A DNA stretch of 64,000 nucleotides. Source: Macrostomum lignano. Taxonomy: Eukaryota. Shown piece by piece: positions 1-40,235 of this stretch. The notes beneath the pieces are model-generated. The model was not told where the DNA came from, made no database searches, and saw only the letters and a program-made list of their open reading frames with translations. The DNA lies in NCBI GenBank assembly GCA_002269645.1, contig NIVC01000037.1, forward strand, positions 1 to 64,000, written 5' to 3'. The position numbers and the translations under genes were made by a program. The number at the start of each line of letters is the position of its first letter. The stretch's first letter is position 1.

Positions 1-365
1 GCTTCGTTCGGACGATACCGGTGCTCGAGAGAGGGCCGGCAGTCCATCTTTTTAGCGCTGGCGCGATTTGCAGCCATATGGCGTGATTATTTGGGTGCAC
101 TCACACTAAACTAAACTAGACAACTAACTAATGAGTCAGGAGGCACACAAAGTGCGCTCGCTGAGAGGGGTGGGGCGACTGCAAGATAAGACTAGGGGTG
201 GGGTAGAGATAAAAACAAATGTACAGTGGAATGGAAGGCTAACTAAAGTACTTTTAAGAGCTAAGCTAGGCTAGTCTAAACTATTCAACTTCTAATAAGC
301 CTTTCTAGGAAAGGCCTGCAAAAACTAGAGAATTCTCTTAAGAGTATCCCTCCACGGAAATCTTT
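1..365 (-). mobile_element. 5' end of a third tandem unit (U5 3' half, leader, start of ORF1), continuing off the left edge
   Basis: Position 1 matches 6456 and 10945. It includes the MAANRASAKK start codon region and the leader. Confidence 0.9.
297..365 (-). ncRNA. U5: U5 snRNA 3' half only (69 nt), abutting the retrotransposon 3' end
   Basis: Matches 11248-11316 apart from a few substitutions. The loop 1/5' half is replaced by the element tail (plus strand tcttt|gttgttaaaac). Confidence 0.9.
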
Positions 366-964
366 GTTGTTAAAACGAGGTGCCGTCGAAACCGGCGCGG
401 GTCAGTTCCGAAGAACTCTGCCGCAGTTATATTTTGTATTTGATCGAAAGAATTAAAAATATTTACAAGATTTCGATTTGAATATTTAATACGAATATTG
501 AAATTAAAAATATACATATATAAAACTATTTTTCAATATTTTGCAGTATTTTGCACGCATTTGGGGATAAAAAAGAGGGGAGGGAAATCCCGCACAAAGA
601 AGGGATCTAATAAAAACAGGACATCTAAAAAATACGTGCTTGATATTTGAAGGCCTATTGAGAGTAAAAGCAAGACATTTAAGTAAAAAAAAGAGATTAA
701 AAATGCAATAGCGCATATTTGAATTTAGTTGTAAAAATAGAATGAATATAGTAAAGGTGTAAAAAAGCAATTAGTAATATTTGTAGAGCAGTTGGGTAAA
801 AAACACAGTTGGGTAAATTGTAAAAAGAAACGCGAGGAGACATAGAGATTACCTAATCAGTCCTAATGACTGATCAACCGATCTCTGTCTCAGGCAGCAA
901 GTTTAGTTTTATTAGTTGCGTTTCAGAGCGTGGTCACTTCCGGTTTGGAAGGCTGGTAGCCAGC

Positions 965-3743
965 CTAACCCTGGGGTGGGAATCCCCTGTTTCTTTCCCG
1001 ACGCCTCATGGCATCCCAGAGGACATTGAGGACAGGGGTTCGGCCCGGAGCCCGAGGGGCTTCCGGCTCAATGTGGAAGCTGTGGAGCTTGGCTGCCCTC
1101 ATCTTGAGCAGCCAAGCCACCCCCAGCTGCTTGACCCTGTCTGCGAGCATCGGCATACCTGCCAGCTTGTGCAGGTATTCAATGCTGATGTAGGATGGCA
1201 CACCATAGCAGATACGGAGAGCCAGGTTTTGAATTTTCTGCAATTTGATTTGGTTAGTCGCACAGATTTGGCTCAGGATTGGCGCTCCGTAGGTGAGAGC
1301 GCTTTCTCCGTATGCCCTGTACAGCATTCTGAGGGTGGTGCTACTCAGCTTTGTCATTTTTGCAATTCTGCACAGTGACATTACAATGGCTCTGCTGGTA
1401 TCTGCCATGTTGTCCACATGTTTGTTCAGGCAGAGGCTCTGGTCAAGGAGGACACCCAGGAATTTCACCTCCTGACAGTACGGAACCTCAGTGTCCCCCA
1501 GATACAGTTTGGGTCGCAAGTCCATGCGCCTAGTGGGTTTGTAGTTGAAAGCGATTGCTTTGCTTTTACCGGCATTCAGTCTAATGCCTTGTTTACCGCA
1601 CCAGTCAAAGACTCGTCTGAGGTAGCTTTGAAGGGATGTTCGGAGCCCCGCAAAGGTGTCTGCTGAGGCCCAGACGGCCATGTCGTCTGCGAATTGACTG
1701 CGTTTGACGCTTGAGATGGTGGGAGTCGGCATTGAGCTGACGAAGAGGAGGTACAGGAGAGGGCTCAGAATGCCTCCCTGAGGGACGCCAGCCTGGATGG
1801 TGTGGGGATCGCTTAGGGCCCCCTCGATTCGAACCTGGATCTGTCTGTCTCGCAGGTAGTCAGACAGGATTCGCATGAGCATAGGTGGAAAACCATCGTG
1901 AGCATGCTATGCCTGATCTTGTCGTGCCAGGTGGAGTCAAAAGCTGCCTCTGCATCCAGGAAGACTGCAGCGGACTTTTTAGCTTTGCACTTTGCTACCA
2001 TGACATCTTGTGCCAGACGGCACAGGTTGTCATACGTGGAGTGAATTTTGCGGTAGGCGCATTGGTCATCTCCTAGGGTCTTATTATCCTCAAGGTGCTT
2101 GGTGAGTCTTTTTGCTATAAGCTTCTCAAACACTTTGCCCAGACATGAGGTCAGGCTGATTGGTCTGTAGGAGTTGGGGTGTTCGGGCGGTTTGTCCGGC
2201 TTGGGGATCATTGTCACCACAGCTTTCTTCCAGGCGCTGGGGAAAATCCCTCGACCGTAGCAGGCGTTGAAGAGGTTAGTGAGTCTCGTGATTGCCACCC
2301 CCTCTAAGCCCAGCTTGAGGACGCAGTTGGGAATCTTGTCCAGCCCGGGTGCTCCATCAGGCCTGAGGTGCTCCAGTTCCCACACTGTGTCTGCCACAGA
2401 GAATGCAGCATCAAGTGGGTGGGTCTCGATGGGTTCGATTCCCTCAGGAACGGGGTAGAATGAGGTGAGCTGTGCCACATCGGCCACCTCACGTTTGAGC
2501 TGTTCGCATGTGGAAGGGACTGGGCGCATCTTTGAGTCCAGAGTCTCGGCTAGAAGGTTAGCCTTCTCCAGATCTGTGTGCGCAGTTGTTTGACCCAGGG
2601 TGAGGCTGGGGATGGAGGTTGGCTTAAATTTGCCCATCAGCTTTTTAGTGTCATGCCAGAAATTCTTCACTTTCTTGTTCTTGCTGTTTTCAACAATACT
2701 CTCACAGACTTTGGTGAGCTTTCCATTCTGGAAGGAGTTAATTTCTCTCTTTATGCGATTTGCGAGCTGGTTTGCTTGGGTTTTGAAATTTTGATCCCGT
2801 GTGCTGAAGAAGAGGCGTCTGAGTCGTCTGCGCTCTTTGATCAGGTCGAGGATGTACTTGGGTAGGGCGTTTTTGGCACCACAGTCTGGTACTGTGGAGT
2901 CAATCACGGTGTGAATGGCCTTTGTGATGTGATCCACTTCGGCATTGATTTGGTCAGCATTTGATAATTTAATATTCTGATCTGAGCTCAAAGCTTCACT
3001 GATTTTGAGTCTGAACTCGTCCCAGTTTGTTTTTGAGAAGTTTTTGGGTCTGGGGGACCAGCCCATTTCTTCGACTGAATATTGAGCGTGAGGATTATAG
3101 GTAAGTGGTCACTGCCCAGGTCAGGACCCACCTCAAAGTCCTGCACAAATGGGAGAAAGTCCTCAGTGGCCAGGGCGAGGTCCAAGACATTCCTAGAAAT
3201 CAGCCCGTTTTTGGTGGCCAGTCTGGTGAACTGACCGGCTTGATTGAGAATGGTGGGCGAGGTGGGGCCCTCAGACAGCCAGTCGTGCAGCTGGTAGCCA
3301 GCCATGTTGTTGCTGCTGTCACCCCCGAGGAAGCGGTGTCTGGCATTGAGGTCACCCATGAGCACACTGCGCCTACGAGAGAGAAGATTTTTGAGTAGGT
3401 TCAGGTTCAGATGGTACGGTGCTGGAGACCTGTACACCAGAGCGAGATTGAAGTCAGGACCAGAGTTGTCAGACAAGCTCACGGTGCAAGAGATGGCTTC
3501 ATGGTTGACATTGTCATACTGCAAGCGCACATTTGTGAGTTTGACGCGAGGAGAGTGGGCAAGGAGAAGCCCGCGTTTGACTTGCGGGGTATCATACCGA
3601 ATGATGGAGTACCCGGGAATCTGGACAGTGTGACAACTTTTGAGAATGGTCTCAGAAAAGAGGGCAATGTCTAGCTCCTGACTGACGACCCACTGTGTCA
3701 GCTCTCTGATTTTCGGGTTGAATCCCCTGCAGTTTAAATGCAT
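965..3743 (-). CDS. Retrotransposon ORF2: APE endonuclease + reverse transcriptase, no RNase H seen (frameshifts at ~3050 and ~1898)
   Basis: Endonuclease motifs HLNCRG, SET, GDLNA, DLAL and SDHLPI. RT motifs KPDK..YRPISLTS, FLDAEAAFD, QGGILSPLLY, FADD and KFLGV. The Jockey-like C-terminus is QKIQNLALRICYGVPSY...LH. The ~1898 break is in frame in unit 2. Confidence 0.92.
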
Positions 3744-3829
3744 AATCTTCAGGGCTGTGGTTTGATTGTTTGAGTCTACAGTTAACGCACTGAAGTTTCA
3801 ATTCAAGTCTTGAGTTTAGCTGCCTGAGA

Positions 3830-6532
3830 CTAGGACTCAGTGGTCATGCCAGCCATGCCCGGCACTTCCTGGAGTGCAGCCCGCACAATGTCCTCAACCA
3901 TTTTACTGGTTGATTCCACAGTGAGGACCTCCCCAGGCGGTCGGGACAGGGCCTGCACAACCACTTGAGTCAGAGAGCGGGTGATCAGGGGCAACAGCAT
4001 GCTCACCACCGACATAAAGTCACTAAGCTGCAGCTGCACCGCCTGGCCGGCATCAGCTGACGGAGCAGTCGCATTGACATCAGACTCGGTCTCTGCCGCC
4101 GGAGCGCTCCTGGCATCATCGGTCACGATGACAAGCGGCCGGATCGCGGCGGGTACCGGCACCGTGCGCCTGCCTCGGCGGATCAGCCAGCCGCTGTCGG
4201 AGTCGTCGTCGGCGGCGGCGTCGTCGGTCTCACTTGACACTGGGGCAGCAGCGGCCGCAGCTTCCGCAGCTCGCGCCGCGGCTTTGGCCTCAGCAGCCGC
4301 TCTGGTCGCCTTGTCGTGCTCCGCCTTGGCGACGGTGCAGGCTCGACTGGTGGTTCGGTGCGAGCCGCCGCAGTTGGCGCAGACCGCTGGGCCCTCGTGC
4401 TGGCACTCCTTCCAGGAATGCTGGCCGCCGCAAATCCGGCAGCGCTGCTGCCCCCGACACTGGGCAGCGCGGTGGCCGAACTCCTGGCAGCGCTGGCATT
4501 GCAGAGCGCGGACCGGCTCGTCTGTGCGGCTGTCCTCGCAGTTGAACTTCAAGAAGTCGGTGCAGATGCCATCGCGGAGGCACTTCTCGTAGGTCATCGC
4601 CGACTTTGTGAAGATGCGCACGAACTGGGTTGCCTTCCCAGTCGCTCTGGCTCGGATTCTGTGGACGCTGACAATGTCCAGCTTGAGCGTGTCGCGCAAC
4701 AGGGTCGCGAAGTCAGCCTCCGAGAATGCGAGGGGCACCTCAGTAGCGACGAAGGTGCGTACCGGCTGCTGCTGCACTCTGTCGGGCCCTGTTCTGTTGT
4801 CCAGCGGTCGGCTCGGGCTGGACGGCGCTTTACGGGATGCTCGAGCAGCTTCTCCTCGCGCAGCGCGCCGCCCAGGAAGACGTTGTAGTCCCGCTCCGAC
4901 GCTGGAACACGAGATAGGCCGGCTGATTCGCCATCGGCGCAGTGTTGACGGCTCTAGCTTCGCCGGCAAAGTTGGTCTGCAGCCAGGCAACGAACTGCAT
5001 CAGCTTGTTGGCCGCGTCCCGGTGCACCTCAAAAACGATCGGCGGGATGGCAGCCTGGGGCCTTCTGGGCGGCGCAGGGCGCGCCGCAACCTGCGCGTAG
5101 GGCCGCGCTGCCGCAGCCGCCTGCGCGCTTGTCGCCGAAGCCGCCGCCGCACCGGCCGGCCAGGAAGCCGCCGAAGCCGCCGCCGCACCGGACGCCGCGC
5201 CGCGACCTCCTCGCCTGCCTCGCTGGTGGCCGCCACGGCCGCGCCGACCCCGATCGCCTTCGCGGTCTCGCGTCGCCGTCGCCTGCCGCTCCTGGGGCCT
5301 GTCGTCGCCCCGGCCGCCCTGGTCGTCGTCGTGGCCGCCTTGGTCGTCGTCCCGACCGCCTTGGTCGTCGCCGAATGGGCCGCCGTTTAGCGGCTGGCTG
5401 TAGGTCGGGTCATCCGGCAGAGCTCGCTTGCGCCGCAGCTCCGGCTTGGTGACACGGAATGTTAGCGAGATGCGGACGCCATTCTGAGAGTGGGCGGCGG
5501 GCACCTGGTGCTGCAGGCGTTTCTGGCAGTTTCCTGCCATCAGAATCAGCGAGCCTGGCAGCGTTGGAAAGCGGTGCGTCACGTTGCCGTCCCGACGGCG
5601 CAGCATGAACAGCCGCTCAGCGCCGAAGGACACGGTCGCGATCGTCGGCCTGTCGCCGAGCTCATCCTCATCGTCCGAGTGCCAGGGAATCCGGTCTCCC
5701 GGCTCGGTGTAGAAGTTCACCAACACGGAGTTGAACTTCGGGACATCGAACTGGGTATCATGGTAAATGAAGTCACGAATGTCTTCAATTACCTGATGCC
5801 AGTTAGATTTTCCTTCAGCTCAACCCCGCTGTAGGTGTACGACGGGCCGATCCAGTAGACGCGGCGCTGCTCACTCGGACGATGCTGAAAGGCCAGAGGC
5901 AGCAGGTCGGTGATCAGGCGCTCGTAGACTTGGTCCGCGACCTCGCTCAGGAACTTGGGCGCATAGATGATGGTGCTGTCGCTGGCGTAGATCGTCTGCT
6001 GACAGTCAGTCAAGTCAGGCTCATCAGGGAAGATGATTTGACTGATGTCAGCGTCCAGTTGCTCGGCAGGGGGCTTTGGCAGCGTCGAGGCCTGGTCTGC
6101 AGCCGATTGCTGGCGCTCCTCAGACGTCGGCGCTGCCGCTGCCGCACTGAGCTCGCTGGACTCGGCAGTTGGTGGCTCGGTGGTTGCTGCGGCCTCGTTG
6201 GATGGCAGGGCGCTTGTCTGGCCTGGCTCGTCGCAGTCGAGAGACATGCGCTGCTCTGCCTCTGCGCCTGCAGCCTCCGGCAGCTGCTCATTCTCTCGCA
6301 GGATCTCCTCTGCGTTGCGCAAGAGCTCGCCGGCCGGTGGGCTGATCGAGTGGCGGCCTTCCAGACTGCGTCGAGCTCGCATCAGGCCTGCTGGCGGCGG
6401 GCTCGCAGTCGATGGCTCAGCTGTCGGCGTCAGTCCAAGAAGCTGGCGACCGTAGGCTTCGTTCGGACGATACCGGTGCTCGAGAGAGGGCCGGCAGTCC
6501 ATCTTTTTAGCGCTGGCGCGATTTGCAGCCAT
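3830..6532 (-). CDS. Retrotransposon ORF1: acidic N-terminus + AlkB 2OG-Fe(II) dioxygenase + RGG linker + gag-like region with three CCHC knuckles (broken by frameshifts in this assembly)
   Basis: Built from ORF pieces 5789-6532, 4830-5726 and 3830-4990. Knuckles are CQRCQEFGHRAAQC, CRICGGQHSWKEC and CANCGGSHRTTSRAC. The break at ~5810 lies in an A4 run, and adding one A gives ...ELKEKSNWHQVIEDIRDFIYHDTQFDVPKFNSVLVNFY. In unit 2 the N- and C-termini are fused in one ORF (10107-11021). Confidence 0.8.
5450..5972 (-). CDS. alkB: AlkB-family (ALKBH2/ALKBH3-like) dioxygenase domain within ORF1
   Basis: Motifs YTYSG, FNSVLVNFY, WHSDDE (HxD), IATVSFGAERLF, GSLILM, QHQV (second His) and RISLTFR (RxxxxxR) occur in the canonical order. 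Confidence 0.92.
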
Positions 6533-6750
6533 ATGGCGTGATTATTTGGGTACACTCAAACTAAACCTAAACTACAACTAACTAATGAGTCAGGAGGCAC
6601 ACAAAGTGCGCTCGCTGAGAGGGGTGGGGCGACTGCAAGATAAGACTAGGGGTGGGGTAGAGATAAAAACAAATGTACAGTGGAATGGAAGGCTAACTAA
6701 AGTACTTTCAAGAGCTAAGCTAGGCTAGTCTAAACTATTCAACTTCCAAT

Positions 6751-6819
6751 AAGCCTTTCTAGGAAAGGCCTGCAAAAACTAGAGAATTCTCCTAAGAGTA
6801 TCCCTCCACGGAAATCTTT
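6751..6819 (-). ncRNA. U5: U5 snRNA 3' half only (69 nt), abutting the retrotransposon 3' end
   Basis: Same 69-nt segment and same junction (tcttt|gttgttaaaac) as at 365/366. Confidence 0.9.
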
Positions 6820-7417
6820 GTTGTTAAAACGAGGTGCCGTCGAAACCGGCGCGGGTCAGTTCCGAAGAACTCTGCCGCAGTTATATTTTGTATTTGATCG
6901 AAAGAATTAAAAATATTTACAAGATTTCGATTTGAATATTTAATACGAATATTGAAATAAAATGTACATATATAAAACTATTTTTCAATATTTTGCAGTA
7001 TTTTGCACGCATTTGGGGATAAAAAAGAGGGGAGGGAAATCCCGCACAAAGAAGGGATCTAATAAAAACAGGACATCTAAAAAATACGTGCTAGATATTT
7101 GAAGGCCTATTGAGAATAAAAGCAAGACAAATTAAGTAAAAAAAAGAGATTAAAAATGCAATAGCGCATATTTGAATTTAGTTGTAAAAATAGAATGAAT
7201 ATAGTAAAGGTGTAAAAAAGCAATTAGTAATATTTGTAGAGCAGTTGGGTAAAAAACACAGTTGGGAAAATTGTAAAAAGAAACGCGAGGAGACATAGAG
7301 ATTACCTAATCAGTCCTAATGACTGATCAACCGATCTCTGTCTCAGGCAGCAAGTTTAGTTTTATTAGTTGCGTTTCAGAGCGTGGTCACTTCCGGTTTG
7401 GAAGGCTGGTAGCCAGC

Positions 7418-10020
7418 CTAACCCTGGGGTGGGAATCCCCTGTTTCTTTCCCGACGCCTCATGGCATCCCAGAGGACATTGAGGACAGGGGTTCGGCCCG
7501 GAGCCCGAGGGGCTTCCGGCTCAATGTGGAAGCTGTGGAGCTTGGCTGCCCTCATCTTGAGCAGCCAAGCCACCCCCAGCTGCTTGACCCTGTCTGCGAG
7601 CATCGGCATACCTGCCAGCTTGTGCAGGTATTCAATGCTGATGTAGGATGGCACACCATAGCAGATACGGAGAGCCAGGTTTTGAATTTTCTGCAATTTG
7701 ATTTGGTTAGTCGCACAGATTTGGCTCAGGATTGGCGCTCCGTAGGTGAGAGCGCTTTCTCCGTATGCCCTGTACAGCATTCTGAGGGTGGTGCTACTCA
7801 GCTTTGTCATTTTTGCAATTCTGCACAGTGACATTACAATGGCTCTGCTGGTATCTGCCATGTTGTCCACATGTTTGTTCAGGCAGAGGCTCTGGTCAAG
7901 GAGGACACCCAGGAATTTCACCTCCTGACAGTACGGAACCTCAGTGTCCCCCAGATACAGTTTGGGTCGCAAGTCCATGCGCCTAGTGGGTTTGTAGTTG
8001 AAAGCGATTGCTTTGCTTTTACCGGCATTCAGTCTAATGCCTTGTTTACCGCACCAGTCAAAGACTCGTCTGAGGTAGCTTTGAAGGGATGTTCGGAGCC
8101 CCGCAAAGGTGTCTGCTGAGGCCCAGACGGCCATGTCGTCTGCGAATTGACTGCGTTTGACGCTTGAGATGGTGGGAGTCGGCATTGAGCTGACGAAGAG
8201 GAGGTACAGGAGAGGGCTCAGAATGCCTCCCTGAGGGACGCCAGCCTGGATGGTGTGGGGATCGCTTAGGGCCCCCTCGATTCGAACCTGGATCTGTCTG
8301 TCTCGCAGGTAGTCAGACAGGATTCGCATGAGCATAGGTGGAAAACCATCGGTGAGCATGCTATGCCTGATCTTGTCGTGCCAGGTGGAGTCAAAAGCTG
8401 CCTCTGCATCCAGGAAGACTGCAGCGGACTTTTTAGCTTTGCACTTTGCTACCATGACATCTTGTGCCAGACGGCACAGGTTGTCATACGTGGAGTGAAT
8501 TTTGCGGTAGGCGCATTGGTCATCTCCTAGGGTCTTATTATCCTCAAGGTGCTTGGTGAGTCTTTTTGCTATAAGCTTCTCAAACACTTTGCCCAGACAT
8601 GAGGTCAGGCTGATTGGTCTGTAGGAGTTGGGGTGTTCGGGCGGTTTGTCCGGCTTGGGGATCATTGTCACCACAGCTTTCTTCCAGGCGCTGGGGAAAA
8701 TCCCTCGACCGTAGCAGGCGTTGAAGAGGTTAGTGAGTCTCGTGATTGCCACCCCTCTAAGCCCAGCTTGAGGACGCAGTTGGGAATCTTGTCCAGCCCG
8801 GGTGCTCCATCAGGCCTGAGGTGCTCCAGTTCCCACACTGTGTCTGCCACAGAGAATGCAGCATCAAGTGGGTGGGTCTCGATGGGTTCGATTCCCTCAG
8901 GAACGGGGTAGAATGAGGTGAGCTGTGCCACCTCGGCCACCTCACGTTTGAGCTGTTCGCATGTGGAAGGGACTGGGCGCATCTTTGAGTCCAGAGTCTC
9001 GGCTAGAAGGTTAGCCTTCTCCAGATCTGTGTGCGCAGTTGTTTGACCCAGGGTGAGGCTGGGGATGGAGGTTGGCTTAAATTTGCCCATCAGCTTTTTA
9101 GTGTCTAGTAGCTCTTTGATCAGGTCGAGGATGTACTTGGGTAGGGCGTTTTTGGCACCACAGTCTGGTACTGTGGAGTCAATCACGGTGTGAATGGCCT
9201 TTGTGATGTGATCCACTTCGGCATTGATTTGGTCAGCATTTGATAATTTAATATTCTGATCTGAGCTCAAAGCTTCACTGATTTTGAGTCTGAACTCGTC
9301 CCAGTTTGTTTTGAGAAGTTTTTGGGTCTGGGGGACCAGCCCATTTCTTCGACTGAATATTGAGCGTGAGGATTATAGGTAAGTGGTCACTGCCCAGGTC
9401 AGGACCCACCTCAAAGTCCTGCACAAATGGGAGAAAGTCCTCAGTGGCCAGGGCGAGGTCCAAGACATTCCTAGAAATCAGCCCGTTTTTGGTGGCCAGT
9501 CTGGTGAACTGACCGGCTTGATTGAGAATGGTGGGCGAGGTGGGGCCCTCAGACAGCCAGTCGTGCAGCTGGTAGCCAGCCATGTTGTTGCTGCTGTCAC
9601 CCCGAGGAAGCGGTGTCTGGCATTGAGGTCACCCATGAGCACACTGCGCCTACGAGAGAGAAGATTTTTGAGTAGGTTCAGGTTCAGATGGTACGGTGCT
9701 GGAGACCTGTACACCAGAGCGAGATTGAAGTCAGGACCAGAGTTGTCAGACAAGCTCACGGTGCAAGAGATGGCTTCATGGTTGACATTGTCATACTGCA
9801 AGCGCACATTTGTGAGTTTGACGCGAGGAGAGTGGGCAAGGAGAAGCCCGCGTTTGACTTGCGGGGTATCATACCGAATGATGGAGTACCCGGGAATCTG
9901 GACAGTGTGACAACTTTTGAGAATGGTCTCAGAAAAGAGGGCAATGTCTAGCTCCTGACTGACGACCCACTGTGTCAGCTCTCTGATTTTCGGGTTGAAT
10001 CCCCTGCAGTTTAAATGCAT
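7418..10020 (-). pseudogene. ORF2 of the deleted unit (APE + RT), with frameshifts and an in-frame deletion of about 58 codons
   Basis: ORF pieces 9478-10020, 9275-9583, 8668-9270 and 7418-8752 match unit 1. LIKE-LL-DTKK replaces LIKE(60 aa)DTKK. Confidence 0.85.
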
Positions 10021-10106
10021 AATCTTCAGGGCTGTGGTTTGATTGTTTGAGTCTACAGTTAACGCACTGAAGTTTCAATTCAAGTCTTGAGTTTAGCTGC
10101 CTGAGA

Positions 10107-11021
10107 CTAGGACTCAGTGGTCATGCCAGCCATGCCCGGCACTTCCTGGAGTGCAGCCCGCACAATGTCCTCAACCATTTTACTGGTTGATTCCACAGTG
10201 AGGACCTCCCCAGGCGGTCGGGACAGGGCCTGCACAACCACTTGAGTCAGAGAGCGGGTGATCAGGGGCAACAGCATGCTCACCACCGACATAAAGTCAC
10301 TAAGCTGCAGCTGCACGATGTAGGTGTACGACGGGCCGATCCAGTAGACACGGCGCTGCTCACTCGGACGATGCTGAAAGGCCAGAGGCAGCAGGTCGGT
10401 GATCAGGCGCTCGTAGACTTGGTCCGCGACCTCGCTCAGGAACTTGGGCGCATAGATGATGGTGCTGTCGCTAGCGTAGATCGTCTGCTGACAGTCAGTC
10501 AAGTCAGGCTCATCAGGGAAGATGATTTGACTGATGTCAGCGTCCAGTTGCTCGGCAGGGGGCTTTGGCAGCGTCGAGGCCTGGTCTGCAGCCGATTGCT
10601 GGCGCTCCTCAGACGTCGGCGCTGCCGCTGCCGCACTGAGCTCGCTGGACTCGGCAGTTGGTGGCTCGGTGGTTGCTGCGGCCTCGTTGGATGGCAGGGC
10701 GCTTGTCTGGCCTGGCTCGTCGCAGTCGAGAGACATGCGCTGCTCTGCCTCTGCGCCTGCAGCCTCCGGCAGCTGCTCATTCTCTCGCAGGATCTCCTCT
10801 GCGTTGCGCAAGAGCTCGCCGGCCGGTGGGCTGATCGAGTGGCGGCCTTCCAGACTGCGTCGAGCTCGCATCAGGCCTGCTGGCGGCGGGCTCGCAGTCG
10901 ATGGCTCAGCTGTCGGCGTCAGTCCAAGAAGCTGGCGACCGTAGGCTTCGTTCGGACGATACCGGTGCTCGAGAGAGGGCCGGCAGTCCATCTTTTTAGC
11001 GCTGGCGCGATTTGCAGCCAT
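10107..11021 (-). CDS. Deleted ORF1 of unit 2 (304 aa, in-frame fusion lacking the AlkB core and zinc knuckles)
   Basis: ...GPSYTY|I|VQLQLSDF... joins unit-1 position ~5830 to ~4038. Confidence 0.8.
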   Translation of the reverse strand: MAANRASAKKMDCRPSLEHRYRPNEAYGRQLLGLTPTAEPSTASPPPAGLMRARRSLEGRHSISPPAGELLRNAEEILRENEQLPEAAGAEAEQRMSLDCDEPGQTSALPSNEAAATTEPPTAESSELSAAAAAPTSEERQQSAADQASTLPKPPAEQLDADISQIIFPDEPDLTDCQQTIYASDSTIIYAPKFLSEVADQVYERLITDLLPLAFQHRPSEQRRVYWIGPSYTYIVQLQLSDFMSVVSMLLPLITRSLTQVVVQALSRPPGEVLTVESTSKMVEDIVRAALQEVPGMAGMTTES

Positions 11022-11247
11022 ATGGCGTGATTATTTGGGTACACTCAAACTAAACCTAAACTACAACTAACTAATGAGTCAGGAGGCACACAATTACACA
11101 AAGTGCGCTCGCTGAGAGGGGTGGGGCGACTGCAAGATAAGACTAGGGGTGGGGTAGAGATAAAAACAAATGTACAGTGGAATGGAAGGCTAACTAAAGT
11201 ACTTTCAAGAGCTAAGCTAGGCTAGTCTAAACTATTCAACTTCCAAT

Positions 11248-11363
11248 AAGCCTTTCTAGGAAAGGCCTGCAAAAACTAGAGAATTCTCCTTAGAGTATCC
11301 CTCCACGGAAATCTTTAGTAAAAGGCGAAAGATTTAATCGTGGAATGAAGAGAAACCAGAGTT
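11248..11363 (-). ncRNA. U5: U5 spliceosomal snRNA, complete gene (116 nt)
   Basis: The reverse complement reads AACUCUGGUUUCUCUUC...AAAUCUUUCGCCUUUUACUAAAGAUUUCCGUGGAGGGAUAC...AGUUUUUG-CAGGCCUUUCCUAGAAAGGCUU. It shows the metazoan U5 5' stem, invariant loop 1 (GCCUUUUAC), an Sm-like site (AGUUUUUG) and a 3' stem-loop. Confidence 0.95.
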
Positions 11364-11589
11364 GAAGTTAAACAAGAGTGGGTAGCTTTTCTTATGTAGA
11401 AAATTCTGTAACCGCTTTAATTAAACATTCGTTTTCATAAAGCATTCGTTCCTGGCATGCCAATCTCTCTACTGACATAAGTGGAACTATTTGCGCATGA
11501 AAGCTAGTTTTTGTCTAGGCCTACGCAAACTGTTTTTTTCTATGCTGTAGAGAGTGGGAAGGATAGGCAGTAAAATTTCGGTAATTTTT

Positions 11590-12459
11590 TTAAAACTTCA
11601 TAGTAAGTCTTTTCTGAAGTAGCCACTGGTTAGCGAGGGTGATGACCTCTTCTTTGGACTCGAAGCGGTGCCCACGGAGTGGCCGCTTGAGCTGACGGAA
11701 TAGATGAAAATCGGAGGGTGCCAGGTCTGGTGAATAGGCCGGATGTGGGAGGATTTCGAACCCCGCAGTGGTGGCAGCATTCACCGCAACCTGGGCAGTG
11801 TGAGCTGAGGCATTGTCGTGAAGCAGCAAGGGGGCCAGCACTCAGCTTCCCCCGCTTCTTCTGGACCACTGCCTGACGAAACCGGCCCAGCTGTTCGGAG
11901 GACCAGACACCTGTGACAGTGTGCCTAACAGACAGTGACAGTGAGCAGGATCCCCTGACAGTCCCAGAAGAAACAGCCCTGGAATCTCGCTCAGACACGG
12001 GGGTCCATAGTGGCAGATCCAGCACTCATCCCCAGTAATGATTCATCGCTCAAATCCATCCAGGTTCTCATTGTAGGGGTCAGGCAGTAGTCCCGACGAG
12101 AAAGCATTCGGGGCGCTACTGCCTCAACTTTTATGGCTCACCCTGCCACGCTTGAATTCGTTGTAAAGTCGCTCGATGGTGCGCAGAGAGGGACAAGTTG
12201 TGGGGTACAGACTTTATCTTCTCCTCAATTGCAAAATTTAATATGAGGGCTCGGTATTTCTGCTTGTGTGTGCATTTTGCGGAAAATTCAGGGGGTGCTT
12301 AAAGTTCGTGCAGAAAAGATACAGTTAAAAAGACATGAAAAGAAAACACTGCACCCTATAAATTCTATATAAAAGTACTTTAAAAAGCCGAAAAAAATTA
12401 TGAAAAAAAGCTTTTGAAATGGCTGAACGGCAAAACTATAGATTTGAAGCACCCTCGTA
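11590..12459 (-). mobile_element. Degenerate mariner (Tc1/mariner) transposon remnant
   Basis: Fragments PSLRTIERLYNEFKRGR, IITGDECWI, FWDCQGILL, HDNASAHT and HPAYSPDLAPSDFHLF. One terminus reads TA-CGAGGGTGCTTCAAA (minus strand from 12459). There are stops and deletions, and the second TIR was not found. Confidence 0.85.
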
Positions 12460-12981
12460 TTTGACAGTTGACAAGACGGACTGAATATGGGCGCCCCCCC
12501 CTACCCAGTTAATAATTTGGAGTTATTGCGCAAAACTTAGTCGTGTTTGAACAGTGTCATGGAATTACGAGCTACATGGTGTATGCTAATACCCTATAAT
12601 TACATATCTTAGCTATGCGTGTATAATATAGGCCATTCTTAACTATTGTTCCAGCCTATCGATTGGCTCACTCGCTTTCTTTAATCAATCCAGCTCTTGC
12701 CTCAAGTAGTGTCGATTGCCATCATTACAATCAATCTATTGTCAACAATGGTCAGAGCAAACTTATTAGTCGCCTAACTTATTAAAATTAATTCTTGTAG
12801 TTTCAAGATCTTACGCTTGAGCTGTTGAATTTTAGAAATATGTTGATGAGTTTTAAAATTATTAGAAATTGTTGCTAAGGCGTGTAAGGAGTAGAACCAG
12901 TTGATAAATTCGACTTGGTTGCCACAATGGCGCCACGGTTTGTCTCAGTTCAGCTAATGAGGAATCTCTGAGGAAGCCAAG

Positions 12982-13700
12982 AGAGACAGAATTGCAGAGA
13001 GACAGAATTGCAGAGAGACAGAATTGCAGAGAGACAGAATTGCAGAGAGACAGAATTGCAGACAGACAAAATTGCAGAGACAGAATTGCAGAGAGACAGA
13101 ATCGCAGACAGACAGAATTGCAGACAGATAGAATTGCAGAAATACAGAGTTGCAGACAGACAGAATTGCAGGCAGACAGAATCGCAGACAGATAGAATTG
13201 CAGAAATACAGAGTTGCAGACGGACAGAATCGCAGACAGACAGACTTGCAGACAGATAGAATTGCAGAAATACAGAGTTGCAGACAGACAGAATTGCAGA
13301 CAGACAGAATTGCAGACATACAGAATTGCAGACAGACAGAATTGCAGACAGACAGAATTGCAGGCAGACAGAATCGCAGGCAGACAGAATTGCAGGCAGA
13401 CAGAATCGCAGGCAGACAGAATTGCAGACAGACAGAATCGCAGGCAGACAGAATTGCAGACAGACAGAATTGCAGACAGACAGAATTGCAGACAGACAGA
13501 ATCTCAGGCAGACAGAATTGCAGACATACAGAATTGCAGACAGAAAAAATTGCAGACAGACAGAATTGCAGACATACAGAATTGCAGACAGACAGAATTG
13601 CAGACAGACAGAATCGCAGGCAAACAGAATCGCAGACAGAAGCAGACAGGCGGCACAGAAGCAGACAGGCGGCACAGAAGCAGACAGGCGGCAGAAATTG
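12982..13700. repeat. 14-bp minisatellite (GACAGAATTGCAGA-like), ending in three ~19-bp units
   Basis: Direct reading of tandem units. Confidence 0.9.
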
Positions 13701-15531: not shown

Positions 15532-16174
15532 TTCTATGTTGGCTACTTACAGTAGGACAGTTGAGACTTTTTGTGCGGTTTACCACAACAACGGAAAACA
15601 CTTCACTTACTCTTTATAGTCTCGAAAATGCTTTTATTCTTATTTGATAAGTATTGGATGCCATCTGAATCTGAATGCGGCTGACTTTAATATCATTTTT
15701 TTATACTTTTGAATACACCTACAGTATTGTTTATTATACTCTACACTAAGTGCAATTAAAACTACTGCGGCAGATTTAGATTATTACGAGAGACAATAAA
15801 TAAACGAATAAATAAAGTCGCAGTGACTTCCTAATCGTAATTGACAACTTCTGCTGGATAAACAAGTTGACGTGTATTTTATTAGTGGCAAGTTAGTAGT
15901 ATACCCAGAATATCTACTCTTTAATTTACTCAGGAAATCAGCCATACGTCTAGTAATAGAGCGAAGTAAGAGTAGAAAAAAAGAAATTACAGAAAGCGCA
16001 TTTTCAATTTCATATCATTTTAATTCTGCGAAGCGATAAGCCACTAACAAAGGTTCTAATGCTGTCACGGAGGTGTATTAGTGAAACTGACAAGCCTGCT
16101 TAGCATGGACCAATAGAGCATATCATAGTGTATATTGGTCGAGTAAGTACATTGCTGGCTTTTAATTTCAAGAA

Positions 16175-16995
16175 CTCCAATCCCCAACTCCAATTCCCCA
16201 ACTCCAGTTCCCCAACTCCAATTCCCCAACTCCAGCTCCCCAACTCCGATTCCCCAACTCCAGCTCCCCAACTCCGATTCCCCAACTCCAGCTCCCCAAC
16301 TCCGATTCCCCAACTCCAACTCCCCAACTCCAGCTCCCCAACTCCGATTCCCCAACTCCAACTCCCCAACTCCAGCTCCCCAACTCCGATTCCCCAACTC
16401 CGATTCCCCAACTCCAGCTCCCCAACTCCGATTCCCCAACTCCAACTCCCCAACTCCAGCTCCCCAATTCCGATTCCCCAACTCCAGCTCCCCAATTCCG
16501 ATTCCCCAACTCCAACTCCCCAACTCCAATTCCCCAACTCCAGCTCCCCAACTCCAACTCCCCAACTCCAGCTCCCCAACTCCGATTCCCCAACTCCAAT
16601 TCCCCAACTCCGATTCCCCAACTCCAGCTCCCCAACTCCAGCTCCCCAACTCCGATTCCCCAACTCAATTCCCCAACTCCGATTCCCCAACTCCAGCTCC
16701 CCAACTCCGATTCCCCAACTCCAATTCCCCAACTCCAATTCCCCAACTCCGATTCCCCAACTCCAATTCCCCAACTCCAATTCCCCAACTCCAATTCCCC
16801 AACTCCAATTCCCCAACTCCGATTCCCCAACTCCAATTCCCCAACTCCAATTCCCCAACTCCAATTCCCCAACTCCGATTCCCCAACTCCAATTCCCCAA
16901 CTCCAATTCCCCAACTCCAATTCCCCAACTCCAGCTCCCCAACTCCAATTCCCCAACTCCAATTCCCCAACTCCAACTCCCCAACTCCAACTCCT
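16175..16995. repeat. 14-bp minisatellite (CCCCAACTCC+AATT/GATT/AGCT)
   Basis: Tandem units. Confidence 0.9.
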
Positions 16996-17745
16996 AACTT
17001 CAGTTCTGTGCTCAGTGGAAACAGCAAATGATGTGGACTAGAGAGATCATAAGGAATCCGAATAAGCAGAATTAGCTAGCTAATTAAAATTAAATAAGCG
17101 AGAAAATTGAAATTATTTTTTTGAAACTAAACTTGGATAAGCAGTAAAAACATCGAAACTTATAATAATAGTATAAGAAGAAAGGATAATTCAACAAAAC
17201 AGGAATGATGACGCTGGGACAATCCAATACGTAAAGATTCGAAAACAGATGAAACGCGCACACGCTGTCAGTGCTGCGGAGATGTGTTGCTAATAGCCCT
17301 CACCGATGAGAATTCAATGCGCAAGCGGTTCCATCTTCAGAAGATTGGCTGGAATAGATAAATTGATATAGTAGGCTAGATCTATTCCAGATTCCTGGCC
17401 AATATAAAACCGGATACTAACTGAAGACTTATATTTGTAATTCTAAGTGCCAGACAGTATCTGCAACTTATGCCTTAGGCTTACACATCTGTGAGTGCCT
17501 ATGTGTGAATCTGGTCTGATAAACAGAAGTTGTGCATTTATAACAGCCTTAGTTGTTAGTCACGTGAACTACGCTGGGCACAGGGCCAGTTGGGCACCCC
17601 GCTTGGCATTCAGCCAGTCAGCAAGGGGTGAGAGAATTTAGCATCTTTGCAACAACTTCCTAGCTCAGTTCACTTAAAGAGCGGTTCTTATAGATTTTGT
17701 CTTGCTTGCTGTTATTACGGGTGATTACCGGTATATTGCATGTGG

Positions 17746-19660
17746 TTTAGTTTGATGGGAGATTGTTGAGTTTAGTTTGATGAGAGATTGTTGAGTTTAG
17801 TTTGATAGGAGATTGTTGAGTTTAGTTTGATGGGAGATTGTTGAGTTTAGTTTGATGGGAGATTGTTGAGTTTAGTTTGATGGGAGATTGTTGAGTTTAG
17901 TTTGATGAGAGATTGTTGAGTTTAGTTTGATAGGAGATTGTTGAGTTTAGTTTGATGGGAGATTGTTGAGTTTAGTTTGATGGGAGATTGTTGAGTTTAG
18001 TTTGATGGGAGATTGTTGAGTTTAGTTTGATGGGAGATTGTTGAGTTTAGTTTGATGGGAGATTGTTGAGTTTAGTTTGATGGGAGATTGTTGAGTTTAG
18101 TTTGATGGGAGATTGTTGAGTTTAGTTTGATGGGAGATTGTTGAGTTTAGTTTGATAGGAGATTGTTGAGTTTAGTTTGATGGGAGATTGTTGAGTTTAG
18201 TTTGATGGGAGATTGTTGAGTTTAGTTTGATGGGAGATTGTTGAGTTTAGTTTGATGGGAGATTGTTGAGTTTAGTTTGATGGGAGATTGTTGAGTTTAG
18301 TTTGATGGGAGATTGTTGAGTTTAGTTTGATGGGAGATTGTTGAGTTTAGTTTGATGGGAGATTGTTGAGTTTAGTTTGATGGGAGATTGTTGAGTTTAG
18401 TTTGATGGGAGATTGTTGAGTTTAGTTTGATGGAGATTGTTGAGTTTAGTTTGATGGGAGATTGTTGAGTTTAGTTTGATGGGAGATTGTTGAGTTTAGT
18501 TTGATGGGAGATTGTTGAGTTTAGTTTGATGGGAGATTGTTGAGTTTAGTTTGATGGGAGATTGTTGAGTTTAGTTTGATGGGAGATTGTTGAGTTTAGT
18601 TTGATGGGAGATTGTTGAGTTTAGTTTGATGGGAGATTGTTGAGTTTAGTTTGATGGGAGATTGTTGAGTTTAGTTTGATGGGAGATTGTTGAGTTTAGT
18701 TTGATGGGAGATTGTTGAGTTTAGTTTGATGGGAGATTGTTGAGTTTAGTTTGATGGGAGATTGTTGAGTTTAGTTTGATGAGAGATTGTTGAGTTTAGT
18801 TTGATGGGAGATTGTTGAGTTTAGTTTGATGGGAGATTGTTGAGTTTAGTTTGATGGAGATTGTTGAGTTTAGTTTGATAGGAGATTGTTGAGTTTAGTT
18901 TGATAGGAGATTGTTGAGTTTAGTTTGATGGGAGATTGTTGAGTTTAGTTTGATAGGAGATTGTTGAGTTTAGTTTGATGGGAGATTGTTGAGTTTAGTT
19001 TGATGGGAGATTGTTGAGTTTAGTTTGATGGGAGATTGTTGAGTTTAGTTTGATGGGAGATTGTTGAGTTTAGTTTGATGGGAGATTGTTGAGTTTAGTT
19101 TGATGGGAGATTGTTGAGTTTAGTTTGATGGGAGATTGTTGAGTTTAGTTTGATGGGAGATTGTTGAGTTTAGTTTGATGGGAGATTGTTGAGTTTAGTT
19201 TGATGGGAGATTGTTGAGTTTAGTTTGATGGGAGATTGTTGAGTTTAGTTTGATGGGAGATTGTTGAGTTTAGTTTGATGGGAGATTGTTGAGTTTAGTT
19301 TGATGGGAGATTGTTGAGTTTAGTTTGATGGGAGATTGTTGAGTTTAGTTTGATGGGAGATTGTTGAGTTTAGTTTGATGGGAGATTGTTGAGTTTAGTT
19401 TGATGGGAGATTGTTGAGTTTAGTTTGATGGGAGATTGTTGAGTTTAGTTTGATGGGAGATTGTTAAGTTTAGTTTGATGGGAGATTGTTGAGTTTAGTT
19501 TGATGGGAGATTGTTGAGTTTAGTTTGATGGGAGATTGTTGAGTTTAGTTTGATGGGAGATTGTTGAGTTTAGTTTGATGGGAGATTGTTGAGTTTAGTT
19601 TGATGGGAGATTGTTGAGTTTAGTTTGATGGGAGATTGTTGAGTTTAGTTTGATGGGAGA
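17746..19660. repeat. 25-bp minisatellite (GAGTTTAGTTTGATGGGAGATTGTT), very homogeneous
   Basis: Period 25, beginning about 20 bp past the sortilin-like stop codon. Confidence 0.95.
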
Positions 19661-34612: not shown

Positions 34613-34978
34613 CACGGCCTAATGACCCGATATACTTTCAACACAATTAAACCCACAAGTGGGCTAGAAAAATGGACAACGTATTTCGATTGCGCTATCA
34701 GTACGCTAATCAGCGCAGCAAGTTCATGTCAGGAGTTCTACTCCAAGAGGCAGACCGCTGGGCCACAAACCGCCCCGAGGGAATAGGTGTCAAATGGGAG
34801 TTTTAACACTTGAGGGGATCCCGCTCAATGTACAGTGGAGGCGCCAAATGAGTAAGGACCCCTAAGTACAGTGCGGGCGTAAAACCATTTTCATCCCCAC
34901 GAGTCAAGGGATCCCAAGTGGGCACATAGGGGAATCCCAGGCAGGGAGGCGTAAAAAAGATAGATCCTTATCTTTCAC

Positions 34979-39994: not shown

Positions 39995-40065
39995 TTTGCA
40001 AACAGAGAGCGTGAGAGAGCGAGCGGAGAGAAGGATTATCTCTCTACCCTGGCTCTGGGGGTCTG

Positions 40066-40190
40066 TATATATACTAAAAAATCTGCTCAGCTCGCCTGTT
40101 ATTGGATAAATCGCCAAAAACCAACCAAAATCATCAAAAATCACCCCCAAAATCATCACCCACCCCACCCTCCATCCGGGGGTATATAAG
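40066..40190. promoter_or_regulatory. Divergent promoter region of the Polinton-like element, with two TATA boxes
   Basis: TATATATA at 40066-40073 lies ~70 nt before the predicted PolB ATG (39994, minus). TATATAAG at 40183-40190 lies ~45 nt before the ATG at 40236. A third TATATAA at 40806-40812 precedes the ORF at 40886. Confidence 0.55.
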
Positions 40191-40235
40191 GCGCTGCACG
40201 GCTGTCAGAGAGCTCTCTGCTGCTGCTGCTAAATC

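What the first reader, a model, noticed from the sequence alone, without database searches (positions are those of the whole stretch)
366..11363. Non-LTR retrotransposon joined at one fixed nucleotide of U5 snRNA, next to invariant loop 1
Seen: both element 3' ends in the window (366 and 6820) abut the same U5 base. In element sense the junction reads ...GTTTTAACAAC|AAAGATTTCCGTGGAG, and the intact gene reads GCCTTTTACT|AAAGATTTCC (11317/11316). Known: sequence-specific non-LTR elements target multicopy RNA genes (R1/R2 in 28S rDNA, Keno and Utopia in U2, NeSL/SLACS in SL RNA). Inference: this is a U5-specific family. The AAA after the cut gives a T-ended primer that can pair with the A-rich tail, as in TPRT. 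I do not know of a U5-targeting Jockey/I-like APE element, but I cannot search to confirm novelty.
Basis: partly seen in the sequence, partly recalled or inferred. Interest (0 to 1): 0.9.

Follow-up and report, generated by a model that had tools for sequence, protein, structure and literature searches.

The report
Retrotransposon that targets U5 snRNA genes
A young LINE-type retrotransposon of the flatworm Macrostomum lignano inserts at one fixed nucleotide of U5 spliceosomal RNA genes. Full-length copies carry their own copy of the gene's 3' part, so each insertion rebuilds a complete U5 gene and head-to-tail arrays build up.

Summary
On the minus strand the window holds a complete U5 snRNA gene (11364-11249) followed by two tandem element copies and the start of a third. 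Both element 3' ends (6820, 366) abut U5 nucleotide 49.

The two window junctions alone would not prove targeting. The AlkB-like part of ORF1 identified the organism as Macrostomum lignano and gave three further contigs. Across the four sequences all 10 element 3' junctions lie at U5 48|49. They involve at least two unrelated U5 loci, two different U5 3'-half variants, and one 5'-truncated copy with a 14-bp target duplication. This makes site-specific insertion the best reading.

Two new points emerged:
- Full-length copies begin with a 95-nt leader, made of U5 nt 49-116 plus 27 nt of U5 flank. Each insertion therefore restores an intact U5 gene at the array head.
- ORF1 (901 aa) fuses an ALKBH3-like dioxygenase to an RRM/CCHC gag-like protein.

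ORF2 (926 aa, APE plus RT) looks Jockey-like, not L1/Tx1- or R1-like. A Tx1-clade family that targets U5 is already listed in the literature, so U5 targeting itself is not new. No genome-wide census was possible.

The parts
11365..11445 (-). U5 promoter region. It holds a PSE-like block GCTTTATGAAAACGAATGTTTAATT at about -78..-52 and TTCTACATAA near -30.
   Evidence: Both blocks are conserved upstream of an otherwise unrelated second U5 locus (L123). Promoter function is inferred.
11249..11364 (-). Complete U5 snRNA gene at the head of the array. Nt 1-48 lie at 11364-11317 and nt 49-116 at 11316-11249. The 3' part doubles as the leader of copy B.
   Evidence: Rfam RF00020, 83.5 bits, full length.
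6820..11316 (-). Element copy B (4497 nt). Layout: leader 11316-11222 (U5 49-116 plus 27 nt), 5'UTR with an 8-nt duplication, ORF1 start at 11021, ORF2 start at 10020, RT ORF at 8752-7418, 3'UTR at 7417-6820. Two internal deletions remove most of ORF1 and part of the ORF2 linker.
   Evidence: The same deletions are present in NIVC01003829.1 unit 1.
6725..6819 (-). Leader of copy A: a copy of U5 nt 49-116 (6819-6752) plus 27 nt of U5 3' flank (6751-6725).
   Evidence: Alignments. The end of the NIVC01002892.1 array shares exactly these 95 nt and then diverges.
6533..6724 (-). 5'UTR of copy A.
   Evidence: It lies between the leader and the first ATG of ORF1.
3830..6532 (-). ORF1 of copy A (901 aa in the family majority). 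Layout: disordered N-terminus, ALKBH3-like 2OG-Fe(II) dioxygenase (about 5866-5450), G/D/R-rich linker, RRM-like region, three CCHC knuckles (about 4498-4339). In this copy it is broken by 1-nt deletions near 5804, 4906 and 4812.
   Evidence: Pfam PF13532. PDB ALKBH3, E 5e-22. The natural GenBank protein PAA49615.1 has AlkB, the RRM-like region and the first CCHC in one frame. Indel list.
965..3743 (-). ORF2 of copy A (926 aa when intact). APE endonuclease lies at about 3743-3093 and reverse transcriptase at about 2207-1448. There is no RNase H and no C-terminal CCHC. In this copy it is broken by 1-nt deletions near 3057 (C5 instead of C6) and 1899.
   Evidence: Pfam PF14529/PF03372 and PF00078. 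An intact 926-aa ORF2 is present in L123:12792-15572. Indels.
366..964 (-). 3'UTR of copy A. It is AT-rich, then has a GC-rich segment of about 60 nt, and ends ...CACCTCGTTTTAACAAC with no poly(A).
   Evidence: A relative with 39% identity in ORF2 (L133) ends ...CCACTCGTTCAATCAA after a strong hairpin.
1..365 (-). Start of a third unit, cut by the window edge: leader 365-271, 5'UTR, ORF1 ATG at 77-75.
365..366 (-). Junction between the 3' end of copy A and U5 nt 49.
6819..6820 (-). Junction between the 3' end of copy B and U5 nt 49 (the leader of copy A).

Best explanation
This is a young family of APE-type non-LTR retrotransposons in Macrostomum lignano. It may still be active. It integrates in the sense orientation between nt 48 and 49 of U5 snRNA genes, at the 3' edge of loop 1.

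Shown by sequence:
- Every 3' end seen abuts U5 nt 49.
- A 5'-truncated copy carries a 14-bp target duplication (U5 49-62).
- Every full-length copy starts with a 95-nt leader that copies U5 nt 49-116 plus 27 nt of U5 flank.

Inferred mechanism:
- The endonuclease nicks the bottom strand at 5'-GGAAATCTTT|AGTAAAAGG-3'. The T-ended 3'-OH then primes reverse transcription (TPRT). Priming probably occurs on RNA that reads through into the next U5 part (AAAGAUUUCC).
- The top strand is cut about 14 nt downstream.
- For full-length cDNA, the target's U5 end anneals to the leader copy. The product is a seamless complete U5 gene (target promoter and 5' part plus the element's 3' part), then the element, then the displaced old U5 3' half.
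- The rebuilt gene, and perhaps the target-like internal junctions TTTTAAC(AAC)|AAAG, can be hit again. This would explain head-to-tail arrays whose distal units are the oldest.
- The leader could also let the U5 promoter drive element RNA by read-through. An internal promoter is equally possible.
- ORF1p carries an ALKBH3-like dioxygenase that presumably demethylates the element's RNA or cDNA.

Confidence by part: about 0.85 for site-specific U5 insertion, about 0.6 for the carried leader that rebuilds U5, and about 0.3 for transcription from the U5 promoter.
For: - Ten of ten 3' junctions lie at U5 48|49: window 2, NIVC01002892.1 4, NIVC01003829.1 2, NIVC01002030.1 2. No element fragment lies outside the arrays in about 90 kb of flanks.
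- The arrays sit in distinct target genes. The NIVC01002892.1 U5 shares only two short promoter blocks with the window's U5. The distal flanks are unrelated.
- The NIVC01003829.1 array ends ...GTTTTAACAAC|AAAGATTTCCGTGGAGAGGAACATTC..., which is a different U5 3'-half variant. It is collinear with the first variant (score 14 versus 6.0+-1.0 in shuffles, 0 of 200 reach it). The unit just upstream of that end still carries the first variant as its leader.
- The 5'-truncated copy reads U5 1-62 (Rfam 43.8 bits), a 9-nt filler, the last ~575 nt of the element, AAA, then U5 49 onward.
- Complete U5 genes head three arrays, at 83.5-83.8 bits.
- Distal units are the most diverged: 7.9 and 6.4 differences per kb from the majority, against 0.6-1.6 for proximal units in NIVC01002892.1.
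- Window copy A has no private substitutions and groups with the units of the other locus, not with its neighbours.
- The family majority has two intact ORFs. One natural unit has an intact 926-aa ORF2.
- GenBank gene models, which are transcript-based (PMC5730564), cover the 5' part of ORF1.
Against: - The sample is small and biased. It consists of loci whose AlkB ORF happened to be annotated. Three of the four sequences share one upstream flank (97.9-98.5% identity) and are probably homeologous copies of one locus.
- Thirty-six per cent of this assembly's length is in chimeric scaffolds (PMC10733133). The link between head and tail of an array could therefore be wrong.
- Gene conversion between arrays could mimic recent insertions and could have replaced an original B-type duplication by A-type leaders.
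- Some 3'-tail variants may be assembly errors. The same unit reads GTTTTAACAAC in the window and GTTTTTAAC in NIVC01003829.1.
- Both window copies have broken reading frames.
- The relatives from other organisms show no U5 in the contigs available.
- The Sm site of the leader-type U5 (AGUUUUUGC) is atypical, so it is not shown that the rebuilt gene works.
Confidence: 0.8

Rival explanations
1. One chance insertion into a U5 gene was later amplified by tandem duplication or unequal crossing-over, and the element has no target specificity. This is the refutation scenario named in the finding.
For: Within the window the two junctions belong to one array of 98.8-99.8% identical units. Three of the four sequences share the same upstream flank. 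The genome has three subgenomes and a redundant assembly.
Against: A second U5 locus with an unrelated promoter flank and an unrelated distal flank carries the same junction. One array ends on a different U5 variant. A 5'-truncated copy with its own 14-bp duplication and an AAA-extended tail sits upstream of an older unit. Window copy A is not a copy of either neighbour. Amplifying a simple insertion by duplication would not leave an intact U5 gene at the array head.
Confidence: 0.06
2. The element|U5-49 junction is a breakpoint of a non-homologous tandem duplication, not a retrotransposition junction. The element originally lay downstream of an intact U5 gene, and its true 3' end is elsewhere.
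For: There is no poly(A) at the junction. The terminal hairpin is not significant (z = -1.56). Within the window the 3' end is defined only by the junction.
Against: The same end abuts two different U5 variants in different flanks. The 5'-truncated copy has the same 3' end and a 14-bp target duplication. The number of terminal AAC/A residues varies. A relative with 39% identity in ORF2 ends its contig with a hairpin plus CTCGTTCAATCAA, resembling CTCGTTTTAACAAC here.
Confidence: 0.03
3. The element is U5-specific, but the 95-nt repeat is a long target-site duplication made at each full-length insertion, with the top strand cut 95 nt downstream. It would then not be a leader carried in the RNA.
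For: In NIVC01002892.1 the array is flanked by the same 95 nt on both sides and diverges right after it. Long duplications of the target RNA gene are known for SLACS/CRE-type elements in spliced-leader genes (from memory, not checked here).
Against: The unit that abuts the B-type U5 half has an A-type repeat at its 5' side. The truncated copy shows a 14-bp duplication, so this model needs two different top-strand cut sites.
Confidence: 0.2
4. The family only prefers U5, or arrays persist there, and many copies lie elsewhere in the genome. This resembles the weakly specific Utopia families.
For: No census was possible. The GenBank annotation removed transcripts overlapping annotated repeats, so only some copies are visible. 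The bottom-strand site TTT|A resembles the generic preference of APE-type endonucleases (from memory).
Against: Ten of ten junctions are in U5, and there are no stray fragments in about 90 kb of neighbouring sequence.
Confidence: 0.2

Closest known systems
Tx1-clade non-LTR families that target snRNA genes: Keno (U2), and an unnamed Tx1 family whose target is given as U5 snRNA in Kojima 2015, Fig. 3 legend (PMC4494074)
   Same: APE-type non-LTR retrotransposons inserted at a specific site of a spliceosomal snRNA gene. One of them has the same target gene.
   Different: ORF2 here is short (926 aa) and has no C-terminal CCHC. It is no closer to L1 ORF2p (67 bits) than to R2 (62 bits), against 250-650 bits to 'transposon BS'-type and unnamed relatives. 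The insertion site of the Tx1 family in U5 could not be looked up. No leader or AlkB domain is reported for it in the text available.
R1 (28S rDNA-specific APE LINE; R1 clade with TRAS/SART)
   Same: A sequence-specific APE element in a multicopy RNA gene. It makes a 14-bp target duplication, needs read-through target sequence in the RNA for precise initiation, and occurs in tandem arrays separated by target fragments (R1 facts from memory).
   Different: The endonuclease here matches TRAS1 EN only marginally (E 0.0065) and R1Bm EN not at all. It has no C-terminal Cys-His motif, a different target, and a leader that rebuilds the target gene.
Utopia (restriction-like-endonuclease non-LTR elements in U2 snRNA genes; PMC4640811)
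   Same: A precise 3' junction in an snRNA gene and variable 5' junctions. It is occasionally inserted in tandem, and truncated snRNA 3' parts lie next to element 3'UTRs.
   Different: A different endonuclease class and a different target. Utopia leaves disrupted U2 genes lacking their first 38 bp. Here full-length insertion leaves a complete U5 gene.
Jockey-clade elements (jockey, BS, X of Drosophila)
   Same: The ORF2 size and domain order (APE-RT, no RNase H, no C-terminal knuckle) and an ORF1 with three CCHC knuckles. The nearest named database relatives are called 'RNA-directed DNA polymerase from transposon BS'.
   Different: This element has an (AAC)n tail instead of poly(A), a flatworm host, site specificity, and an AlkB domain in ORF1. 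Identity to the named relatives is only 30-36%.
AlkB domains in other mobile or viral genomes: orchid Ty3/Gypsy elements (PMC9289625) and plant RNA viruses
   Same: A 2OG-Fe(II) AlkB-type domain acquired by a replicating RNA-based element. It was shown to be an RNA demethylase in the orchid case.
   Different: There it is an extra ORF of an LTR element or part of a viral replicase. Here it is fused to the gag-like ORF1 protein of a non-LTR element and is closest to ALKBH3.

Membership tests
APE-type non-LTR (LINE) retrotransposon | ORF2 with an N-terminal apurinic-like endonuclease followed by a reverse transcriptase | tested here: met
   PF14529/PF03372 at aa 1-217 and PF00078 at aa 513-765 of the 926-aa ORF2.
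APE-type non-LTR (LINE) retrotransposon | 5'-truncated copies sharing the 3' end, flanked by target-site duplications, with no terminal repeats of the element's own | tested here: met
   L125 holds the last ~575 nt of the element between U5 1-62 and U5 49 onward, giving a 14-bp duplication. The only direct repeats around full copies are target-derived.
Target-specific non-LTR family (Kojima 2015 criterion: one kind of sequence in more than 20% of flanks) | The same target sequence at the flanks of independent copies | tested here: met
   Ten of ten 3' flanks are U5 nt 49 onward, in at least two unrelated U5 loci and two U5 variants. The sample is small and there is no genome-wide census.
Target-specific non-LTR family | Specificity holds genome-wide, with few copies outside the target | not testable with these tools
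   The M. lignano assembly cannot be searched by DNA here. Only contigs reachable through annotated proteins were seen.
Jockey clade | The RT groups with jockey/BS/X in a phylogeny with reference elements (RTclass1/Repbase) | not testable with these tools
   No reference library was available. Indirectly, the nearest named hits are 'transposon BS'-type at 30-36% identity.
Jockey clade | Poly(A) tail at the 3' end | tested here: not met
   The ends are ...GTTTTAAC(AAC)1-2, with at most three extra A.
Tx1/L1 group (the clade of Keno and of the reported U5-targeting family) | An L1-like ORF2 of about 1200-1300 aa with a C-terminal Cys-rich motif and an RT closest to L1 | tested here: not met
   ORF2 is 926 aa and ends right after the RT/thumb region with no Cys motif. 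L1 ORF2p scores 67 bits, no better than R2 at 62 bits.
R1 clade | Endonuclease and RT close to R1Bm/TRAS1/SART1, with a C-terminal Cys-His motif | tested here: not met
   TRAS1 EN matches at E 0.0065 only and there is no R1Bm EN match. There is no C-terminal motif.
AlkB/ALKBH 2OG-Fe(II) dioxygenases | The double-stranded beta-helix domain with HxD...H iron ligands and the R...R 2-oxoglutarate motif | tested here: met
   PF13532, E 3.7e-21. Alignment to ALKBH3 (2iuw, E 5e-22) keeps WHSDDE, QHQVP and RISLTFR. Activity was not tested.
U5 spliceosomal snRNA (RF00020) | A full-length match above the curated score, with loop 1 and stem I | tested here: met
   83.5 bits in the window, 83.5 in L126 and 83.8 in L123. 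The Sm site AGUUUUUGC is atypical, and expression was not tested.

The most novel reading that the evidence does not exclude
This may be the first non-LTR retrotransposon found to carry the downstream part of its own RNA-gene target as a 5' leader. Every full-length insertion would then rebuild a complete U5 snRNA gene. That would spare the host gene, recreate the element's own target, and possibly place the element behind the U5 promoter. The logic resembles phages and integrative elements that restore the tRNA gene they integrate into. It may also be the first non-LTR lineage whose ORF1 protein contains an AlkB/ALKBH3-type demethylase. That lineage extends to other animals.
Probability: 0.4. 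Interest if true: 0.8.

Novelty: new variant of a known kind. Interest (0 to 1): 0.66.

Why it matters
Site-specific LINEs are natural models of protein-directed, RNA-templated insertion at a chosen site. R2 is already being engineered for this purpose.

- An APE-type element aimed at a 14-nt stretch of U5 that is nearly invariant across animals adds a new and portable target.
- The leader suggests a way to insert into an essential small-RNA gene without destroying it.
- Arrays that grow at a regenerated target give a readable record of successive insertions.
- The AlkB-ORF1 fusion is conserved in relatives with only 32-39% identity. This points to RNA or ssDNA methylation as a host barrier that LINEs can counter with an enzyme of their own.
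- For M. lignano, the element reshapes U5 gene loci and may convert one U5 variant into another.

Tried and rejected
- A metagenome scan with VAAAGATTTCCGTGGAG gave 120 or more hits. All were chance matches in bacterial contigs, and none continued as U5.
- The closest RT relatives outside M. lignano were uninformative. L001 (64% identity) has no U5 in the 2.4 kb after its stop codon and no alignable 3'UTR. L002 (57% identity) is too short.
- I first argued that copies A and B share a frameshift and so are dead duplicates. I withdrew this. The site is a C5/C6 homopolymer, most units in the other assembly have C6, and all five ORF breaks in copy A are 1-nt deletions.
- The 3'-terminal hairpin of the window element is not significant (z = -1.56).
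- The two distal flanks are not detectably homologous.
- I could not show that the window's third unit is the same unit as NIVC01003829.1 unit 2. It differs by 5 mismatches, against 1 mismatch to units of the other locus.
- My recollection that Dada DNA transposons carry part of their target gene was not borne out by the paper.
- The Rfam U5 model does not report isolated 3' halves, even in 200-nt searches. The halves were therefore shown by alignment instead.
- A gag-only protein search found no further annotated copies.
- More distant AlkB-LINE relatives (L128-L134) show no RNA-gene flank.

Full report
**Observation.** Rfam finds one complete U5 snRNA on the minus strand at 11364-11249 (83.5 bits). 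The gene reads ...CGCCTTTTACT|AAAGATTTCC..., with nt 48 at 11317 and nt 49 at 11316. A U5 3' part preceded by a base other than T occurs exactly twice more, at 366 and 6820, against a chance expectation of 0.00. Both read ...CTCGTTTTAACAAC|AAAGATTTCCGTGGAG in element sense. The split falls exactly between the last base of loop 1 and the stem.

**Anatomy in the window.** Self-alignment shows tandem units of period 6455.
- Copy A (6819->366) is full length.
- Copy B (11316->6820) lacks A 2653-2831 and A 4040-5826.
- Window 1-365 is the start of a third unit.

Read on the minus strand, each unit has four sections:
- a U5 3' part of 68 nt, then about 220 nt up to an ATG;
- ORF1, containing an AlkB-type 2OG-Fe(II) dioxygenase, an RRM-like region and three CCHC knuckles;
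- ORF2, an APE endonuclease followed by a reverse transcriptase;
- an AT-rich 3'UTR of 599 nt that ends in a GC-rich stretch and GTTTTAACAAC, with no poly(A).

So the elements do not sit in separate interrupted genes. One complete U5 gene heads an array of repeats of the form [U5 3' part, element].

**Organism and further loci.** The RT has only two close relatives in the protein collection, at 64% and 57% identity. Neither shows U5. The AlkB part hit two Macrostomum lignano proteins at 98-100% identity. Their cluster mates led to three contigs of assembly GCA_002269645.1: NIVC01002892.1, NIVC01003829.1 and NIVC01002030.1. All three carry the same kind of array.

**Evidence for independent insertions at one nucleotide.**
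- All 10 element 3' ends seen abut U5 nt 49: window 2, and the three contigs 4, 2 and 2. About 90 kb of neighbouring sequence holds no stray element fragment.
- The NIVC01002892.1 array is in a different U5 gene. Its upstream flank shares with the window's only two short blocks, at about -78..-52 and about -30. These are probably promoter elements. Its distal flank is unrelated. A complete U5 gene heads this array too (83.8 bits).
- The NIVC01003829.1 array has the window's upstream flank (98.5% identity) and the same deleted first unit. It ends on ...AACAAC|AAAGATTTCCGTGGAGAGGAACATTCAATGAG.... This is a second U5 3'-half variant (B). It is collinear with the first variant (A), with a score of 14 against 6.0+-1.0 in shuffles.
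- In NIVC01002030.1 the U5 gene runs to nt 62 (Rfam 43.8 bits). It is followed by a 9-nt filler, only the last ~575 nt of the element, AACAAC plus AAA, and then U5 nt 49 onward with a full unit. This is a 5'-truncated copy with a 14-bp target duplication, AAAGATTTCCGTGG.
- The tails vary: (AAC)2, (AAC)3, AACAAC+AAA and TTTTTAAC. At least one variant may be an assembly error.
- Distal units are the most diverged, at 7.9 and 6.4 differences per kb from the majority, against 0.6-1.6 for proximal units in NIVC01002892.1. Window copy A has no private substitution and resembles units of the other locus more than its own neighbours.

Together these points exclude a single insertion amplified by duplication. 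They also exclude a duplication breakpoint.

**The leader.** The NIVC01002892.1 array ends with U5 nt 49-116 plus 27 nt (TATTAGAAGTTGAATAGTTTAGACTAG) and then unrelated DNA. Every unit begins with the same 95 nt before its own sequence, CCTAGCTTAGC..., starts. This could be a 95-bp target duplication or a leader carried by the element. Two facts favour a carried leader:
- The unit that abuts the B-type half has an A-type repeat at its 5' side.
- The truncated copy shows a 14-bp duplication.

My reading is that the RNA begins with, or runs through, the U5-like leader. After TPRT at 48|49 and a top-strand cut near 62|63, the target's U5 end pairs with the leader copy in the cDNA. The result is a seamless complete U5 gene, then the element, then the displaced old 3' half. 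This explains the intact gene at every array head, the arrays themselves, and the age gradient. It is inferred, not shown. Gene conversion or scaffold chimerism could mimic it, since 36% of this assembly's length is in chimeric scaffolds. Whether the U5 promoter drives the element by read-through is open.

**State of the copies.** The family is young, with units 98.8-99.9% identical.
- I tested reading frames gene by gene on a majority of seven units. The consensus DNA was neither printed nor saved. ORF1 (901 aa) and ORF2 (926 aa) are both open.
- One natural unit (L123:12792-15572) has an intact ORF2.
- GenBank PAA49615.1 shows AlkB, the RRM-like region and the first knuckle in one frame.
- Window copy A differs from the majority by five 1-nt deletions inside the ORFs, near 5804, 4906, 4812, 3057 and 1899. 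It has no stop codon created by substitution. These breaks may be real or may be assembly errors.
- Copy B is dead because of its two large deletions.

**Classification.**
- ORF2 has no RNase H and no C-terminal Cys motif.
- It matches L1 ORF2p (67 bits) no better than R2 (62 bits).
- Its endonuclease matches TRAS1 only marginally and R1Bm not at all.
- Its nearest named relatives are 'transposon BS'-type.

It is therefore Jockey-like in architecture and not a Tx1/L1 or R1 member by the features I could test. A real RT phylogeny was not possible. The short repeat tail recalls stringent-type LINEs of the CR1/L2 kind (from memory).

**Known relatives of the idea.** Keno and Utopia target U2. The Fig. 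3 legend of Kojima 2015 lists a Tx1 family whose target is U5 snRNA. U5 targeting by an APE LINE is therefore not unprecedented. I found no other text on it.

**AlkB.**
- The domain is closest to human ALKBH3 (E 5e-22) and keeps the iron and 2-oxoglutarate motifs.
- The exhaustive representative search found other long proteins with the same architecture.
- P0271 (892 aa) aligns to ORF1 in both the AlkB part (35% identity, E 7e-34) and the gag part (29%, E 1e-22).
- L133 is a complete element from another organism. It has an AlkB-ORF1, and its ORF2 is 39% identical over 930 aa.
- Other relatives at about 38% identity have no AlkB hit in the ORFs upstream of ORF2.
- In the paper library the only retrotransposon with an AlkB domain is an orchid Ty3/Gypsy element.

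**Verdict.** The main gap is a genome-wide census.

Noticed in passing
window 5450-5866 (copy A, minus strand); L123/L125/L126; L130-L134: ORF1 of the element carries an ALKBH3-like AlkB dioxygenase fused to the RRM/CCHC gag-like protein. The same fusion exists in relatives with 32-39% identity from other organisms (P0271, P0251/L133). No report of AlkB in a non-LTR element was found in the paper library.
   Followed up: partly
window 11390-11442 (minus strand) and L123:9588-9640: Two short blocks are the only similarity between the upstream flanks of two unrelated U5 loci. They are GCTTTAyGAAAACGAAkGTTTmATT at about -78..-52 and TTCTAyATAA near -30. They are candidate PSE and TATA-like promoter elements of M. 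lignano snRNA genes.
   Followed up: partly
L126:12115-12185 versus window 11249-11316: M. lignano has two clearly different but collinear U5 3' halves. Type A has Sm-like AGUUUUUGC. Type B has the canonical GGAGAGGAACA stem strand and GAUUUGUGA. Type A is the one carried by the element, so insertions may convert B-type genes into A-type genes.
   Followed up: partly
window 11623-12120 (minus strand): A degenerate mariner-type transposase remnant (...LLHDNASAHT...YSPDLAPSDFHLF...) containing stop codons lies about 260 nt upstream of the U5 gene.
   Followed up: partly
window 33966-42797: A segment of about 8.8 kb is bounded by inverted repeats of 0.5-0.7 kb (34115-34612 / 42214-42705, 99% identical). 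It encodes fragments of a protein-primed family B DNA polymerase (PF03175; 36422-37861 and 35817-36368, minus strand). It is probably a truncated Maverick/Polinton-like element.
   Followed up: partly
window 19683-26221 (minus strand): Exons of a sortilin/VPS10-domain host gene (PF15902 E 3e-25; Sortilin_C E 2e-29). They are interrupted by large satellite arrays, including (CAGT)140 at 20198-20757 and a 58-bp repeat at 21238-25129.
   Followed up: no
window 12980-13640, 16173-16994, 17745-19660, 27919-28850, 48024-49326, 50445-51887: The window has a very high density of long, well-conserved satellites with periods of 14-46 bp and up to 77 copies at 98% identity. This agrees with the repeat-rich M. 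lignano genome. The 16-bp satellite upstream of the U5 gene is also present upstream of the second U5 locus at 84-88% identity.
   Followed up: no
L001:3287-4800: The closest relative outside M. lignano (64% identity in ORF2, Logan run SRR28338156) has two copies of an ~800-bp repeat after its ORF2 stop codon. Its 3' end and target could not be determined.
   Followed up: partly
L133:8990-9079: A full-length AlkB-LINE from another organism ends its contig with a very stable hairpin (-52.9 kcal/mol, z = -6.0) followed by CCACTCGTTCAATCAA. This resembles the GCACCTCGTTTTAACAAC end of the window element and may be a conserved 3'-terminal recognition motif.
   Followed up: partly
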